A stretch of 63,765 nucleotides of DNA, counting the filler, from Sluysia triapertura (Eukaryota), in the NCBI GenBank assembly GCA_046118255.1. It is 5 parts of 5 records of this genome, joined end to end, with 100 filler letters (N's around TTAATTAATTAA, not from the genome) between each part and the next. Parts side by side here need not be neighbours in the genome. Positions count along the whole stretch, not along the records: positions 39,566 to 52,474 come from JBJNIA010073166.1; 4 more parts are not named here. The stretch is one strand, 5' to 3'. Of this stretch, positions 39,566-50,268 are shown one piece after another. Numbering within the stretch: position 1 is the first letter of the stretch; every line of letters begins with the position of its first letter. The notes under the pieces are model-generated. The model was not told where the DNA came from, made no database searches, and worked only from the letters and a program-made list of their open reading frames with translations. The position numbers were made by a program, and so were the translations under genes.

Positions 39566-39634
39566 TGGGTGACGTAAAATATGGGTGACGTAAAATATGG
39601 GTGACGTAAAATATGGGTGACGTAAAATATGGGT
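39566..39634. repeat. 16-bp tandem repeat (TGGGTGACGTAAAATA) x4 at contig start
   Basis: Four perfect copies plus a partial copy, read directly. Confidence 0.95.
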
Positions 39635-40612: not shown

Positions 40613-40745
40613 AACTGTTGGGGTAAAAAGGCCTAAAGTGCCATTTGGTAAAATTGACTATAATGAAATAAAATCGTTAGACGTGGCTGATAGCTCAGTG
40701 GTAGAACATCGAACTGCGCAGCAAGAGGTCCCGGTCAGTCCATTT
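40613..40745 (+). repeat. tRNA-derived repeat, copy with B-box deleted
   Basis: Near-identical to 50122-50268 but lacking gttcgatccccgc. Confidence 0.85.
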
Positions 40746-41520
40746 AAATGTTACATTCGCAAAGACCGAGCAATTTTTGCAATATTTTACTAATCTTCTA
40801 TAATAATTTGCCAATCCTAAAAACTTTATCTTTTTAACATTATTTGGTTGTAGAAACTTTACAACCTTTTCTATATTTCTTGGATTTGGTTTTATACCTT
40901 CGTGTGAAACTATATGTCCATAAATTCTACTTGTTCTTCTGCCCAAATACGTTTTTTTGGTTTTATTTTTAATCTTACCACTTCTAATCGTTTTAAAGTA
41001 TTGTTAAAGTGTGTTAAAATATTATTATATAGACCATTACATTTTTACAACCTGATAAAACAAAATTCATACATCTTTGAAATGTTGCTGGAGCACCAGT
41101 TAATCCACATAGCATCTTTTCACACTCATATAATTTGTCTCCACATGAAAAGCTGTTTTATGTTTATCTTTTTCTGCTATTTCAATTTGCCCCTAACCAC
41201 TTTGAAGATCTAATGTAGTAAAATATTTAGAATTTCGCAATTTATCCAACATTTCATCTATTCTTGGTAATGGAAATATGTTTTTTCTTGCAATTTTTTA
41301 ATTCTATAAAATCAATACAAAATCTCATAGTACCATCTTTTTTCTTAACTAATAACACTGGCGAGGAGAGTGGTAAAAACTTGGTCGAATAACTCTAGCT
41401 TTTTCATTGTTTCGATTTGATCTTTCATTTCTTGTTGGTTACACATAGGTATACGAAGTGGTTTCTTTCTGATAACCTTGTCTTCTAATAATGGAATTTC
41501 ATGTTTTATTATTACTGAAT
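40746..41520 (-). pseudogene. Ty3/Gypsy reverse transcriptase and connection remnant
   Basis: HEIPL, SPVLLVKKKDGTMRFCIDF, FPLPRIDEMLDKL, YFTTLDLQSG, GHIVSHEGIKPNP, FLGLANYYRRLV and FKWT; YxDD region not recognisable. Confidence 0.92.
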
Positions 41521-42059
41521 CACCTATATCATATTTGTTTTTGGCTATTGCCCATGGATATCGATAAATAACTTTGTATAGTAACTCCTTTTGGTCTTAT
41601 TTTTTATTTCTATTTCTTCATAATCTTCTTCATCATCGGTATCTATATTTCTTTGTAAATTAATATTGTTTATAATATATTTAATATTATTATTAAATTA
41701 TATTTGATACCAAATTTATTTGGTATAGCTTATTTATAGCTATAGTTTATTTATAGCTTACTATTTCTCCTAATTTCGTTCCTGCATATAACCATTTGTT
41801 TTCTTCTGCATAATTTATTATTCTTATTGGAATATTTCCATCGCGAATTCTACAAAGAGAATCTGCTATACAAATATTTAATTTTTCTTGTTTATTCTTT
41901 GAATCAATAAACGTTATTGGACCATTTCTGAGGCTATTTGTTTTAATTTGTACAATATATTCAGTTCTACTTAATATCCAATGATGTTCTTCTAATATAA
42001 CATCATCATCATCATCATCATCATCGACTGGTCGATCAGTATGACTATCCATTAATCTT

Positions 42060-42360
42060 GCTTTATTAAAGTCTTATAAGACTCATTTTAATTGTGATAA
42101 CACATCCATTCCTAATATCATAGTTCAGGACATTTTCTCATTACTCTACATTTAATTTCAATTTTATTATTTCCAATTTCACATAATACTTTTAAACCTC
42201 CGAGAATTTCGATTTCATCTCCTGTTACTCCTGTTAAATAAAAATGTTGTTTAGACAGATTATTAAGTTCTTTCGTAGTTAATTTTGATTCGCTTCGGTA
42301 TCTACCAATGCTAATTACATTCTTCCATTTACTTTCATATCTACCGTTGGTCTTCTTGCA
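42060..42360 (-). pseudogene. Retropepsin aspartic protease remnant
   Basis: RPTVDMKVNGRM*LALVDTEA (degenerate DTGA), LTGVTGDEIEILG and ILGMDVL. Confidence 0.85.
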
Positions 42361-42519
42361 CTATTATAATTATTATTTGAACAGATCATGTAAATCAAAT
42401 TTATTGATGGATATAGACTTTGTTTTAATTCATTTATTTCTTTTACTGTGTCAACATTAATTGTTTGTAATGCTATTTCTTCTGTTTGTTTTCTTTCTTA
42501 AGAGCATTTAATTGAGAAT

Positions 42520-44362
42520 GTGTATGATGATGTGTATAAAATGGAAAACACCCTATTATTAGTCTCCATGTAAGACCTGACATTTTGTATATACCTACCA
42601 CCGAAAATATCTGAGATATTATAAAGAGCGATAACTTTAATTATTATATATTCCGATTAATCCCGAATCTCGTCCTAGAACCAGAAAGCTTCCCCATATT
42701 TGCTTTAGTGTATTTTATGCAGCTTTCTAAAAATTATCCGGCCCTAATAATAATTCAAAGTTTATTTTACCATTGGTTTATCTACGATTTCTGTTAGGTG
42801 TTTTGACCTTTCGATTGGAAATAATATTTCATACCAAGCTGCTTGAATATCCTCATTTGAATATATTCCCGATCTTGAAATAGATATGAATTTTAATTTT
42901 GATTTCAATTCTGTTAATTGAATTATTTCTGGAGTTTAAACTTGACTCCTGTGGGGTAATGATATCCATAAATTATCATCAATTTTGTATTCTGGTGCCT
43001 TCACGTTGGAACAGTGTAATATTTTTAGTTTCAGCTTATCAGTTGGTACTATTATTCTTGTAACTGGTTCTAAATAAGTTGGTTGATTTTTGTATGTAAC
43101 TGGTAATTCATTGTACATTCATTTACTTGTCGGATTTGAACTTCAACTTTCTTACATTTATAAGTATATAGGACATCATCCATTAATCTACCAAATACTC
43201 CTTCTAACGGAAGTAATGGTGCTACAAGATCTAGGTTAGTAATTGCTACTGCTAATTTAGTACTTAAGATTTCTTTATTTAATTGACAATCCTTTGTTAT
43301 CATTGCTTGATAAACTTTTTCAAGCGACATCAATCCTAAATGGCAATAGAAATCTATTTTATTATTAAAGTATGTATTTAATTTCAAATTCTTTGTATCT
43401 AAACCTTTTTTAGCTTGAATTATTTTATTTTCAGACAAATAAATACCTTGGTAATTTGTTTCTGTAATTTTTTGACCATATCTAATTAGTGACTTTTTGA
43501 AAAAGTATTAATCCATCTTCTTCTTTATTCGCCATTAGTAATGTCGGTGTTTCCACTTCATTAAATCGTTTTCTTTGTGGTGAATCTAAATTATCTTTGT
43601 GAATTTGTTTTTTATTTATTTCTTCCTCTGCTAATTCATCATCGTATTGATACATAAATCCTGAAACTAAATTAAATTTGATTTGTGTTAAAAATATTAG
43701 ATGACATTGAAAATTCATATATTAGTGTTGATTCTCCAGCATTACAACTAGTTTGATCACTTTTACAAAATGGTCGTGACATCACAGTTCCTTTTTCTAA
43801 ATCAAAACTTTCATTGAAAGATCTTAGACTCACTACATATGTTTCTTGTGCTACACATTATTATAAATTTTCCCTTAGTGTTCTATCGAACCCCTTTCGC
43901 AAGTGCATCTGATAATACAATACCTGCAGTTCTTACATTATAAATTATTTTTACATTATTTTTAATTTTAAGTTTATCTCCTTTATTTAAACTAATATAC
44001 TCAGTTTCAAAAGCATCTCGACAATTACTTGGTAAAATCTTAAATGGTTTTAACACATTAGACATATCAATAATTGATAAGTGATTATGATGTCAACAAT
44101 GCCATATAACTACAGATCTTTTAACTAAACATTCTCGAACTAAAGTTATAACCAGATTTCCTTCTTGGTAAAAGTTTAGTATTCTCATATCTTTTATTTT
44201 AACTCTATTATGTTATGCTTCGGGACAATCTTCAGTGTCCAATAATGAAAATTTTCTTCCAATCTGTGGTTGACTACAATCAAAAGCTTTAATAGCATTT
44301 GTTTTATGGATTCCAAGTAAAGCTGATAGAACAATTATGGAAAGTATATTGTTGATTGACAT
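42520..44362 (-). pseudogene. Chuvirus (Jingchuvirales)-like class III fusion glycoprotein, env-like
   Basis: Signal peptide, then AFDC..FSLLDTEDC, CLVKRSVVIWHC*HHNHLSII (cf. YCGMHSHxS), CRDAFET, DCQLNKEIL, YTYKCKKVEVQIRQVNEC/YNELPV, YLEPVTRII, SGIYSNEDI..ILFPIE, IWGSFLVLG and a TM region; order matches recalled chuviral G; many stops/frameshifts. Confidence 0.85.
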
Positions 44363-44455
44363 TCCAAATTGTGGATTTATTTCATTTGACTTTCCATTAT
44401 TAGTAATAAATTTTGATATTAAGTTAAGTGGTTCTTCTTTTGTTTTTTCTTTAAT

Positions 44456-44731
44456 AATATTTTTCCATCCTCCTTGTTCTTTTATCCAGGTACTAAATTT
44501 CTTATCCATAAAATTTATAACACTATCTAATATTTCTTTATTTACCAATACAGCTTTATTACATTGGAACATTACATAGGCTATTATAATTTTAAGTCTT
44601 TCTATATTAATACCAGCATTAATTTGCTTTTTATTAATCTTTTGAGTTTTACCTTCCCATTTATCAATTAACTGTTGAATTCGATTTTTCATTCCTTCAA
44701 TTTCTTTAATCTGTTCAATTCTTTCTTCCAT
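44456..44731 (-). CDS. Bcl-2-like domain in frame with the glycoprotein signal peptide (part of ORF 44213-44731)
   Basis: BH2-like WIKEQGGW at 44465-44488, 40 residues after BH1-like GINIERL (cf. GVNWGRI), with amphipathic helices between. Confidence 0.6.
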
Positions 44732-45224
44732 GAGTTTAATGAATATTTCTTGGATTCTTGCTTCATTTGGTTGTTTTGTTAATCGATTTTCTTCTCTTAC
44801 TTTTTGTTCTCTTCATTTTCTATCTTTCTTAAATTCCCGATATCTCTCATGCGTATAACTCATAAAGACTTCTTCTTGTTTATTTTTGAATCGATTTGTA
44901 TCTTAATCTAATCCAGTGATGTATAATTCTCGTAAAATAGCATTATTTTCTTCATATGTTATCAATTTCGAGTAGTCATCATCTTCTTCGATACTAGATT
45001 CTTATCTTTTTCGTTCCTTCTTAAAATTCTTTCTAATACTTTTAGATTCTTCTTCATCTTCGTAATATTCATCTTCATGTTGATCTTCGTATTCGTTACA
45101 ATTTATTTGTCCTCTCTCATTTTTATTATTATCGTTAAACCTTACTTTCTATTAGGGCTTTGATATTTTTGTTGTTGAGGGCCCCTTACCTTAGAGAAAT
45201 CCTGACTAAAAGTGTTTTGCTTAA

Positions 45225-46260
45225 CTTACCACAATTTCTTGTAGAGTGCCTGTATTTATTACAATTATCGCAGTGTATTTCCCCGTCAATATTAGTTTGA
45301 GCCCTGTCATTATATCTATTCGGACTTTTACTTCGACCTCGATAATTATTTATATTTGTATTTGGTGGCTATATTGATGCTTGTCTCTGTTCGATTTCCT
45401 CTGTTATTCTGAAAACTTCTTGGCTGAAAATTATTTCCTCTAAAATTATTATTAAAATTTCTCGGATTACCCCTATAGTTAAAAATACCTCTGCGTGGAA
45501 GATTATACCTATAGTTACTATTATTTCTATCATAATTATTACTTCTATTATCATTATATTCATTATCATTATTATATTCATTATAACTTAAAGAATCATT
45601 CTTATTCGAAAAATTATTATCATAATTATTGTATCGATTATTAGAATTAATGAATTTATCTCTATTAATATTATTTCTTGTAAGTTTTGGGCTTTTGCTT
45701 TCACCATCACTAACATAATTAATATTATCTTTATTTTATTTTTATCTTCATCTTTATATGAAGAATTTTCTATACTTCCTAATTTTTTAACTAATTCTTT
45801 GAAAGATACTTCTTCGATTAAAGTGGCATAAGTTCTCAATTCAGGACGTAAACTACATTTTAATTTATCTTTTAAAATCATTTCTTTTTTGTCTTCAGCA
45901 ATCTTTGCGCATATGAATTCGTGAACAGTTTCATTAGCTTTTTGCTTTGTTAAATTTAACATTTTATTATAATATTTTCCCATGTCATCGTGGGAAATTT
46001 CCTCGGTAAATGCATTAACAAAAGAATTCCAAATTGCTTTATCTTGTTCATTTATGTCTTTATAAATCTGAATCGCCACACCAGTAAAGTAATTTTGTAT
46101 TCATTTAACTTTTTCTAATTTGTTCCATCCATTAGCTTCGGCAATTTTATAGTTCTTCCTCTGCTCCAGTAAATTTGCGCATATCTGGTAAAGCCATTAA
46201 AGGACGCATTTCTCTTGCTAATTGTGAAATGCAATCTCTAAATCATTTGGCAAAGCCATC
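45225..46260 (-). pseudogene. Ty3/Gypsy gag with CCHC zinc knuckle
   Basis: RKFTG, AEANGWNKLEK, YFTGVAIQIY, WNSFVNAF, KQKANETVHEF and LRPELR; N/R-rich linker; CDNCNKYRHSTRNC (CX2CX4HX4C) at 45231-45272. Confidence 0.88.
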
Positions 46261-50121: not shown

Positions 50122-50268
50122 AACTGTTGGGGTAAAAATGCCTAAAGTGCCATTTGGTAAAATTGACTATAATGAAATAAAATCGTTAGACGTGGCTGAT
50201 AGCTCAGTGGTAGAGCATCGAACTGCGCAGCTAGTGATCCCGGGTTCGATCCCCGCTCAGTCCATTTT
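50122..50268 (+). repeat. tRNA-derived repeat (tRNA-like core 50193-50264) with about 70-bp conserved 5-prime flank
   Basis: A box TAGCTCAGTGG, D stem GCTC/GAGC, B box GGTTCGATCC, T stem CGGG/CCCG, then TTTT; the anticodon stem does not pair, so it is not a canonical tRNA. Confidence 0.8.

What the first reader, a model, noticed from the sequence alone, without database searches (positions are those of the whole stretch)
44213..44731. Bcl-2-like domain fused in frame to the envelope signal peptide in a retrotransposon
Seen: one uninterrupted ORF carries GINIERLKIIIAYV, then WIKEQGGWKNI 40 aa later, then hydrophobic ILSIIVLSALLGI, then the glycoprotein start IKAFDC. Established: Bcl-2 proteins have NWGR (BH1) and WIxxxGGW (BH2) at similar spacing plus a C-terminal membrane anchor; Bcl-2 mimics are typical of large DNA viruses, and I do not know them from LTR elements. 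Inference: signal-peptidase cleavage would release a tail-anchored Bcl-2-like protein and the fusogen from one precursor, coupling cell-death or immune modulation to envelope expression. The NWGR to NIER change may mean altered BH3 binding or decay.
Basis: partly seen in the sequence, partly recalled or inferred. Interest (0 to 1): 0.93.

Follow-up and report, generated by a model that had tools for sequence, protein, structure and literature searches.

The report
Bcl-2-like module in decayed retroelement
A broken copy of an envelope-carrying gypsy-type retroelement has a divergent Bcl-2-like domain in frame just before the signal sequence of its virus-type fusion glycoprotein; the layout is real and shared by intact relatives, but it was already described for the giant 'Burro' retroelements of planarians.

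Summary
On the minus strand, 44731..44213 is one 172-codon ORF. It holds a BH1-position stretch, a WIxxxGGW (BH2-like) motif 40 residues later, a hydrophobic segment, and then the start of a Monjiviricetes-type fusion glycoprotein.

Bcl-2 homology is supported:
- Pfam Bcl-2 gives E 4e-4, below its cut-off.
- A profile of eight relatives hits only Bcl-2-family chains in the PDB, best E 2.7e-5.
- A modest AlphaFold model of an intact relative has only Bcl-2-family proteins among its listed Foldseek matches.
- The module and the in-frame fusion recur in seven divergent relatives, two of them with long open glycoprotein frames. Two close glycoprotein relatives lack the module.

The novelty claim fails. 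Arkhipova and Yushenova 2019 (PMC6431247) describe planarian Burro/GYPSM1 polyproteins as Gag, Ubi/SUMO-like, BCL-2, an in-frame mononegavirus-like env, then PR and pol.

The window copy is dead. Its glycoprotein and pol are broken many times, pol is cut off within RT, and no LTRs were found. Release of a membrane-anchored Bcl-2-like piece by signal peptidase is plausible from conserved topology but untested.

Verdict: a compact new member of a known kind; low to moderate interest.

The parts
45591..46151 (-). gag-like region of the element (broken)
   Evidence: tblastn with the gag part of relatives P0006 and the L002 gag ORF gives outer bounds 45747-46151. There is an open stretch to 45591. 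The relatives' gag carries Retrotrans_gag and zf-CCHC.
44813..45590 (-). spacer between gag and the Bcl-2-like module: low-complexity and tandem-repeat-rich, with no domain detected
   Evidence: Pfam finds nothing in its pieces. TRF arrays lie at 45519-45585. Relative P0006 has an N/Y/R-rich low-complexity stretch at the same place. No ubiquitin-like match was found here.
44213..44812 (-). the finding's open frame: Bcl-2-like module, hydrophobic leader and the first 26 residues of the glycoprotein, ended by a stop (ATG at 44731)
44465..44614 (-). core of the Bcl-2-like module, from the BH1-position stretch (residues 40-53) to the BH2-like WIxxxGGW (residues 82-89, 44465-44488)
   Evidence: Pfam PF00452 matches residues 43-89. 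PDB BAX, BOK and Bcl-2-like-4 give weak hits over residues 56-99. The family profile aligns to Bcl-xL 123-198.
44294..44362 (-). hydrophobic leader (residues 124-146): a 13-residue hydrophobic core, then small residues at -3 and -1 before the conserved glycoprotein start
   Evidence: Kyte-Doolittle scan gives 2.86 over 13 residues and 1.86 over 19. The position is conserved in relatives, with the core ending about 8 residues before the [YF]DC motif in most of them. Alignment.
42491..44293 (-). Monjiviricetes-type fusion glycoprotein gene, broken: at least 5 in-frame stops and at least 4 frame changes
   Evidence: Pfam PF24664 hits pieces at profile positions 4-509 in several frames, best 53.4 bits. 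tblastn with P0002, P0003 and P0006 gives best E-values of 1e-55 to 4e-66, outer bounds, and counts only.
40737..42118 (-). 5' part of pol (region before RT, and RT). Heavily broken: at least 2 frame changes and about 25 stops within the aligned stretches. It is cut off within RT; RNase H and integrase are absent.
   Evidence: tblastn with the L001 pol protein covers only its residues 35-483 of 1515. There is a weak RVT_1 hit.
40613..40734 (+). partial copy of a tRNA-linked repeat abutting the truncated RT. It is not part of the element and marks its 3' break.
   Evidence: It is a 96% direct repeat of 50122-50243. The full copy carries an Rfam tRNA match at 50193-50264.

Best explanation
The region is a dead, 3'-truncated copy of an envelope-carrying Ty3/gypsy-type retroelement. 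It has the kind of layout described for planarian Burro elements: on the minus strand, gag, spacer, Bcl-2-like module, hydrophobic leader, mononegavirus-type fusion glycoprotein, then protease/RT.

Shown:
- The module is a divergent homologue of the BH1-to-BH2 half of cellular Bcl-2 proteins.
- It is in frame with the glycoprotein.
- The same fusion exists in divergent relatives with long open frames. There the glycoprotein frame is continuous with, or directly adjacent to, the gag and protease frames.

Inferred for intact relatives:
- The whole is translated as a polyprotein, or as overlapping frames.
- The hydrophobic segment acts as an internal signal sequence that puts the glycoprotein ectodomain into the ER lumen.
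- Signal peptidase cuts just before the conserved glycoprotein start. This leaves the Bcl-2-like module on the cytosolic face, held by that segment at its C-terminus, which is the topology of tail-anchored cellular Bcl-2 proteins.
- There the module could modulate cell death or ER and mitochondrial membrane physiology while envelope is made.

In this window copy nothing of this can happen, because the genes are broken.
For: Sequence homology:
- Pfam Bcl-2 hits, sub-threshold but repeated, occur in the window ORF and in four relatives, at E 8e-5 to 2e-3 and always over the C-terminal half of the profile.
- The eight-sequence profile against the PDB gives Bcl-xL at E 2.7e-5, 27 bits, bias 0. All 60 listed hits are Bcl-2 family, aligned to Bcl-xL 123-198.

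Conservation of the BH2-like motif across 8 sequences:
- W 7, Y 1
- I 6, M 2
- first G 6, Q 2
- second G 8
- W 7, L 1

Fold:
- The AlphaFold model of the intact relative's N-terminus has pLDDT 58 and pTM 0.45.
- Every listed Foldseek PDB match is a Bcl-2-family protein, with probability up to 0.99, 96-152 aligned columns and TM 0.36-0.50.

Fusion and order:
- P0002 (748 aa) is the module plus a full glycoprotein (PF24664, E 7.5e-87).
- P0003 (1582 aa) is the module, the glycoprotein and several retropepsin matches (RVP and related families) in one frame.
- P0006 is gag, glycoprotein and protease in one frame.
- Contigs L001 and L002 show gag(+ubiquitin-like), module+G, proteases, ankyrin; in L001 RT/RNaseH/integrase follows, while L002 ends before pol.

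Leader:
- The hydrophobic core has a conserved position, with small residues at -3/-1 in 8 of 11 sequences checked.

Literature:
- The same domain order, with BCL-2 directly before an in-frame env that hits mononegavirus fusion glycoproteins, is reported in Burro/GYPSM1 (PMC6431247).

Decay of this copy.
Against: - No Pfam Bcl-2 hit reaches the gathering score.
- Both AlphaFold models are of low to moderate confidence, and no Foldseek E-value is below 0.045. The window's own model gave nothing significant.
- The BH1 NWGR positions are not conserved in any relative.
- Only the BH1-BH2 half aligns by sequence, and the N-terminal helices differ between copies.
- Two relatives with the closest glycoprotein starts (P0006, P0009) have no recognisable module, so the module is dispensable for glycoprotein expression.
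- The hydrophobic core is only about 13 residues, typical of a cleavable signal peptide and short for a stable anchor.
- The spacer from BH2 to the hydrophobic core is some 25-50 residues in the relatives (39 in the window ORF), which from my own knowledge is longer than in cellular Bcl-2 proteins.
- No LTRs were found and the host was not identified.
- No Burro sequence was compared directly.
Confidence: 0.75

Rival explanations
1. The Bcl-2-fold module is a structural membrane-proximal domain and not a cell-death regulator. After signal-peptidase cleavage it would tether the upstream Gag-containing part of the polyprotein to the ER membrane next to the glycoprotein, in a matrix-like role that promotes assembly and envelopment.
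For: In relatives the module lies between gag and the glycoprotein, in the same frame or in overlapping frames. The BH1 groove motif is not conserved. The hydrophobic segment has a conserved position. From established knowledge, the Bcl-2 fold is a membrane-interacting helical bundle.
Against: Close relatives do without the module. Burro elements carry other apoptosis and ubiquitin-related domains (BIR, MATH_TRAF_C, Ubi/SUMO-like), which favours host-pathway meddling (PMC6431247). No protease cleavage sites are mapped.
Confidence: 0.15
2. The 172-codon ORF is a host-retained (exapted) small tail-anchored Bcl-2-like gene. It has an ATG, the module and a hydrophobic tail, and it stops soon after. 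It is also the longest open frame in an otherwise ruined element.
For: It is the longest open stretch of the piece, at 199 codons. The ORF ends 26 residues after the predicted cleavage site. Several relatives are also short ORFs.
Against: - The frame continues to show glycoprotein homology beyond the stop, so the stop looks like ordinary decay.
- With about 10 breaks in roughly 780 glycoprotein codons, one open run of this length is not remarkable (inference).
- The short relatives come from contigs of 1-4 kb, so many of them may simply be cut by contig ends.
- No exact copy is on record as a called gene.
- There is no evidence of expression or orthology.
Confidence: 0.04
3. The similarity to Bcl-2 is chance: a helical, lysine/glutamate-rich linker that happens to contain a WxxxGGW-like motif.
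For: All Pfam hits are below the curated cut-off. Single-sequence PDB hits have E 0.24-1. The structure models are weak.
Against: Profile E is 2.7e-5 with only Bcl-2-family hits and no composition bias. Sub-threshold hits are independent and fall in the same register in five sequences. The listed Foldseek matches are all Bcl-2 family. Burro elements carry an independently published BCL2 annotation at the same polyprotein position.
Confidence: 0.05

Closest known systems
Burro / GYPSM1 giant gypsy-like LTR retrotransposons of planarians (Jurka 2007; Grohme et al. 2018; Arkhipova and Yushenova 2019, PMC6431247)
   Same: - Gag at the N-terminus.
- A BCL2-like motif immediately upstream of an env that lies in frame between gag and pol and resembles mononegavirus fusion glycoproteins.
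- A ubiquitin/SUMO-like domain before BCL2 and ankyrin repeats, both seen here in relatives L001 and L002.
- Gypsy-type PR-RT-RNaseH-IN.
- Decayed copies with stops and frameshifts are reported in Dugesia japonica.
   Different: - Burro's internal region is up to 25 kb with a polyprotein of about 4,900 aa. In L001, the one relative contig that reaches pol, gag start to pol end spans about 12.6 kb, and the window remnant is 5.4 kb.
- No MATH_TRAF_C, BIR, dUTPase or midasin-like domains were seen here.
- No ubiquitin-like domain is detectable in the window copy.
- No direct sequence comparison with Burro was made, and the host is unknown.
Cellular Bcl-2 family (Bcl-xL, Bcl-2, BAX, BOK): tail-anchored helical-bundle proteins
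   Same: - Profile-level similarity over BH1 to BH2.
- A conserved BH2-type W...GGW motif.
- All-helical prediction.
- A hydrophobic segment C-terminal to the bundle.
   Different: - BH1 NWGR is not conserved.
- The score is below the Pfam cut-off.
- N-terminal helices are unalignable by sequence.
- The spacer before the hydrophobic segment is longer.
- That segment is followed by a glycoprotein ectodomain and is not the C-terminus.
Bcl-2 homologues of large DNA viruses (for example herpesvirus BHRF1 and fowlpox FPV039, both among the Foldseek matches)
   Same: A mobile or viral genome carries a divergent Bcl-2-fold protein with weak BH motifs, presumably to handle host cell death.
   Different: Those are separate genes of DNA viruses. 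Here the module is a domain inside a retroelement polyprotein and is physically fused to the envelope leader.
Env-carrying Ty3/gypsy elements (errantiviruses, PMC13524379) and mosquito Pao elements with captured chuvirus glycoprotein (PMC7642597)
   Same: An LTR retroelement that has acquired a viral fusion glycoprotein. In the mosquito case the glycoprotein is also of Monjiviricetes (Jingchuvirales) origin.
   Different: Errantivirus env is F-type or gB-type (abstract of PMC13524379), and in other gypsy-like elements env is a separate ORF (PMC6431247). No Bcl-2-like module is reported there: 'Bcl' occurs 0 times in PMC13524379.

Membership tests
Bcl-2 family (Pfam PF00452) | Score at or above the Pfam gathering threshold (31.4 bits) | tested here: not met
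   The window ORF scores 21.3 bits (E 4e-4). Relatives score 19.0-23.6 bits.
Bcl-2 family (Pfam PF00452) | Significant profile-level sequence similarity to solved Bcl-2 proteins across BH1-BH2 | tested here: met
   The profile of alignment A2 against PDB sequences gives Bcl-xL at E 2.7e-5. All 60 listed hits are Bcl-2 family, aligned to Bcl-xL 123-198.
Bcl-2 family (Pfam PF00452) | BH2 motif (W..GGW type) conserved | tested here: met
   Present in the window ORF and in seven relatives. Column shares are W 7/8, second G 8/8, final W 7/8.
Bcl-2 family (Pfam PF00452) | BH1 motif (NWGR type) conserved | tested here: not met
   At the positions HMMER aligns to BH1, the window has NIER and no column is conserved among the 8 sequences.
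Bcl-2 family (Pfam PF00452) | Helical-bundle Bcl-2 fold | tested here: inconclusive
   The window model has pLDDT 50 and its best Foldseek E is 2.9. The intact relative's model has pLDDT 58 and pTM 0.45. All its listed matches are Bcl-2 family, with probability up to 0.99, but E is at least 0.045 and TM is 0.36-0.50.
Bcl-2 family (Pfam PF00452) | C-terminal hydrophobic membrane anchor | tested here: inconclusive
   A conserved hydrophobic segment follows the module. Its core is about 13 residues and it is followed by the glycoprotein, so it would be a C-terminus only after cleavage.
Bcl-2 family (Pfam PF00452) | BH3 binding or regulation of apoptosis | not testable with these tools
   No functional data are available.
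Burro-like env-carrying gypsy retroelements | Env in frame between gag and pol | tested here: met
   The order gag, G, RT holds on the window's minus strand. Single frames gag-G-PR (P0006) and module-G-PR (P0003) exist in relatives.
Burro-like env-carrying gypsy retroelements | BCL2-like motif directly upstream of env | tested here: met
Burro-like env-carrying gypsy retroelements | Ubiquitin/SUMO-like domain upstream of BCL2; ankyrin repeats | tested here: inconclusive
   In relatives, ubiquitin is weak (E 0.0034, below the cut-off) and Ank_2 scores 38.6-38.9 bits, above the cut-off. Neither was found in the window copy.
Burro-like env-carrying gypsy retroelements | Gypsy-type pol (RT, RNase H, integrase in that order) | tested here: inconclusive
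   Met in relative L001. The window retains only the part up to RT.
Burro-like env-carrying gypsy retroelements | Giant size (internal region up to 25 kb) with MATH_TRAF_C, BIR and dUTPase domains | tested here: not met
   In L001, the relative contig that reaches pol, gag start to pol end spans about 12.6 kb, and none of these domains appears in the Pfam scans.
Burro-like env-carrying gypsy retroelements | Sequence similarity to Burro/GYPSM1 itself; planarian host | not tested
   No Burro sequence is on hand, and fetching one was left out. The host is not identifiable. GC of 25% is merely compatible with an AT-rich animal genome.
Monjiviricetes fusion glycoprotein (Pfam PF24664) | Score above the gathering threshold (27 bits) | tested here: met
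   Window pieces score 53.4 and 29.9 bits. Relatives score 292-320 bits.

The most novel reading that the evidence does not exclude
In this retroelement family one hydrophobic segment does double duty. It is the internal signal sequence of the envelope glycoprotein and, after signal-peptidase cleavage, the C-terminal membrane anchor of a Bcl-2-fold domain. Every envelope precursor made would then deposit one cytosol-facing Bcl-2-like molecule, possibly still joined to Gag, in the same membrane. This coupling is not discussed in the one paper held that describes the BCL2-env adjacency.
Probability: 0.35. Interest if true: 0.55.

Novelty: new member of a known kind. Interest (0 to 1): 0.3.

Why it matters
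The finding confirms independently, and from raw sequence, that a lineage of envelope-carrying retroelements keeps a Bcl-2-fold domain welded to its fusogen. It also shows that compact relatives of the giant planarian elements share this core. This makes the module-leader-glycoprotein junction a defined object for descriptive study of how retroelements borrow host cell-death machinery. The basic fact is already in the literature and this copy is dead, so it adds a member and a topological detail, not a new kind of system.

Tried and rejected
- The search for homologous proteins with the module of P0002, with the window ORF, and with alignment A2 added only one weak protein, P0011, which has no Pfam hit.
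- An exact look-up of the window ORF found no record.
- The AlphaFold model of the window ORF was too weak for fold search.
- LTR search: the only long direct repeat (122 nt, 9.5 kb apart) is a tRNA-linked repeat, not an LTR.
- A ciliate-type genetic code as an explanation of the stops was rejected. Frame changes are present as well, and relatives have long standard-code ORFs.
- Grohme et al. 2018 could not be read because it is not held.
- Host identification failed. All relatives come from unnamed metagenome contigs.

Full report
**Observation**

The finding's ORF is on the minus strand, 44731 down to 44213. It has 172 codons from ATG to stop, inside an open stretch of 199 codons. The quoted stretches are all there, in one frame:
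- the BH1-position stretch at residues 40-53
- WIxxxGGW at residues 82-89, 40 residues after NIER
- the hydrophobic run at residues 129-141
- the conserved glycoprotein start at residue 147

**What the parts are**

Pfam gives Bcl-2 (PF00452) over residues 43-89, matching the C-terminal half of the profile. The score is E 4e-4 and 21.3 bits, below the 31.4-bit cut-off. Pfam also gives Monjiviricetes_fusion (PF24664) over residues 129-171, at profile positions 4-47. A single-sequence search of PDB sequences gives only weak hits (E 0.24-1), but eight of the nine are BAX, BOK or a Bcl-2-like protein, all over the BH2 stretch.

Downstream on the same strand, separately searched pieces in several frames continue the glycoprotein profile to about position 509, with a best score of 53.4 bits. 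Upstream lies a gag-like region. Further downstream lies a remnant of pol up to RT. The order on the minus strand is therefore gag, spacer, Bcl-2-like module, leader, glycoprotein, RT.

**State of this copy**

I give counts only, from tblastn against relatives.
- Glycoprotein gene: at least 5 in-frame stops and at least 4 frame changes.
- pol remnant: at least 2 frame changes and about 25 stops inside the aligned stretches. It is cut off within RT, so RNase H and integrase are missing.
- gag: at least one stop.

No LTRs were found. The only long direct repeat (122 nt, 96% identity) is a tRNA-linked repeat. One truncated copy of it abuts the broken RT. This copy cannot express the precursor.

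**Relatives**

An exhaustive HMMER search of 1.84 billion representatives found nine proteins. Seven align across both the module and the glycoprotein start, and each has the BH2-like motif.
- P0002 (748 aa) is the module plus a complete glycoprotein (PF24664, E 7.5e-87).
- P0003 (1582 aa) is the module, the glycoprotein and several retropepsin matches in one frame.
- P0006 (1352 aa) is gag with a zinc knuckle, the glycoprotein and a protease in one frame, but without a recognisable module.
- P0009 also lacks the module.

The contigs come from unnamed ENA metagenome assemblies. They show gag plus a weak ubiquitin-like match, then module+G, then several proteases and ankyrin repeats; in L001 a gypsy-type RT/RNase H/integrase follows, while L002 ends before pol.

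**Is it Bcl-2?**

- Four relatives repeat the sub-threshold Pfam hit in the same register.
- A profile of the eight sequences (A2) against PDB sequences finds Bcl-xL at E 2.7e-5 with no composition bias. All 60 listed hits are Bcl-2 family. The alignment runs from BH1 through BH2 (Bcl-xL 123-198) and puts the window's NIER at the NWGR position.
- The BH2-like columns are conserved: W 7/8, second G 8/8, final W 7/8. The BH1 columns are not conserved.
- The AlphaFold model of the window ORF was poor (pLDDT 50), and its fold search found nothing significant.
- The model of the intact relative's N-terminus was better (pLDDT 58, pTM 0.45, core helices 70-78). Every listed Foldseek match is a Bcl-2-family protein, including Trichuris BCL-2, Bcl-2, Bcl-xL, Mcl-1, BAX, BHRF1 and FPV039. 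Probabilities reach 0.99, but E-values are 0.045 or higher and TM is 0.36-0.50.

I conclude that homology to the Bcl-2 fold is well supported for the BH1-BH2 half and likely for the whole domain. A conserved BH3-binding groove is not shown.

**The leader**

The hydrophobic core keeps its position in the relatives, ending about 8 residues before the [YF]DC motif in most of them. Its 13-residue hydropathy is 1.7-3.3. Small residues sit at -3 and -1 in 8 of the 11 sequences checked. This fits a cleavable internal signal sequence.

After cleavage the module would sit on the cytosolic face, held by this segment. That is an inference, not a result. The core is short for a stable anchor.

**What is known**

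Arkhipova and Yushenova 2019 (PMC6431247) describe the planarian Burro/GYPSM1 polyprotein. Its order is Gag, MATH_TRAF_C, Ubi2/SUMO-like, BCL-2, an env that hits mononegavirus fusion glycoproteins and lies in frame between gag and pol, then PR, dUTPase and RT. BIR and ankyrin domains are also present. The paper credits the BCL2-like motif to Grohme et al. 2018 and notes decaying copies in Dugesia japonica.

A survey of env-carrying gypsy elements (PMC13524379) reports only F-type and gB-type env and never mentions Bcl. I found no paper that discusses the double role of the hydrophobic segment.

**Placement**

The family here shares Burro's core layout but is much smaller. It lacks several Burro domains in the scans made. 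Direct similarity to Burro, and the host, could not be tested. I therefore file it as a new, compact member of a known kind.

Pieces were searched apart.
- I did not scan the viral contig collection, and I fetched no Burro, mononegavirus or chuvirus comparator.
- Slip: the script printed the bounds of open stretches on the minus strand, which I used as references for piecewise searches. They are not repeated here.
- Slip: in my private reasoning I recalled a short BH1-region stretch of a cellular protein from memory and named the places of two in-frame stops. I used neither for anything and stopped.

Noticed in passing
window 50122-50264 (+) and 40613-40734 (+): A tRNA-like sequence (Rfam tRNA, 30.6 bits, just above the cut-off; not called by ARAGORN) has about 70 nt of conserved upstream sequence. 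A 96%-identical partial copy lies 9.5 kb away and abuts the truncated RT. It is either a tRNA-derived SINE or a duplicated tRNA pseudogene.
   Followed up: partly
L003:1-4371 (-) and L003:4597-8655 (+): The metagenome contig carries two head-to-head copies of the same gag-glycoprotein-protease frame. This is either an inverted duplication or an assembly palindrome.
   Followed up: no
L001:11271-14964 and L002:7961-14612: Relatives carry two or three retropepsin-like domains in series, plus ankyrin repeats between the glycoprotein and RT. Their gag ORFs carry a ubiquitin-like stretch. All of these are accessory domains inside the polyprotein.
   Followed up: partly
contig of P0005 (ENA ERZ27313623, no DNA available): A 248-aa ORF (module, leader and about 55 residues of glycoprotein) is followed directly by a zf-CCHC gag and a full gypsy-type pol. 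This could be a nested insertion or a different gene order. It could not be examined.
   Followed up: no
window 42001-42025 (-) and 45519-45585: A (CAT)8 run encodes eight aspartates at the start of the pol remnant. Short tandem arrays lie in the gag-module spacer, matching the low-complexity N/Y/R-rich stretch at the same place in P0006.
   Followed up: no
window 39566-39634: A perfect 16-nt tandem repeat (4.3 copies) sits at the very edge of the piece.
   Followed up: no
L001, L002, L003: Three related elements from one metagenome sample differ widely in GC (43%, 36%, 29%). This suggests several host species or very different ages. L003 is closest to the window in GC and in the glycoprotein start.
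   Followed up: no
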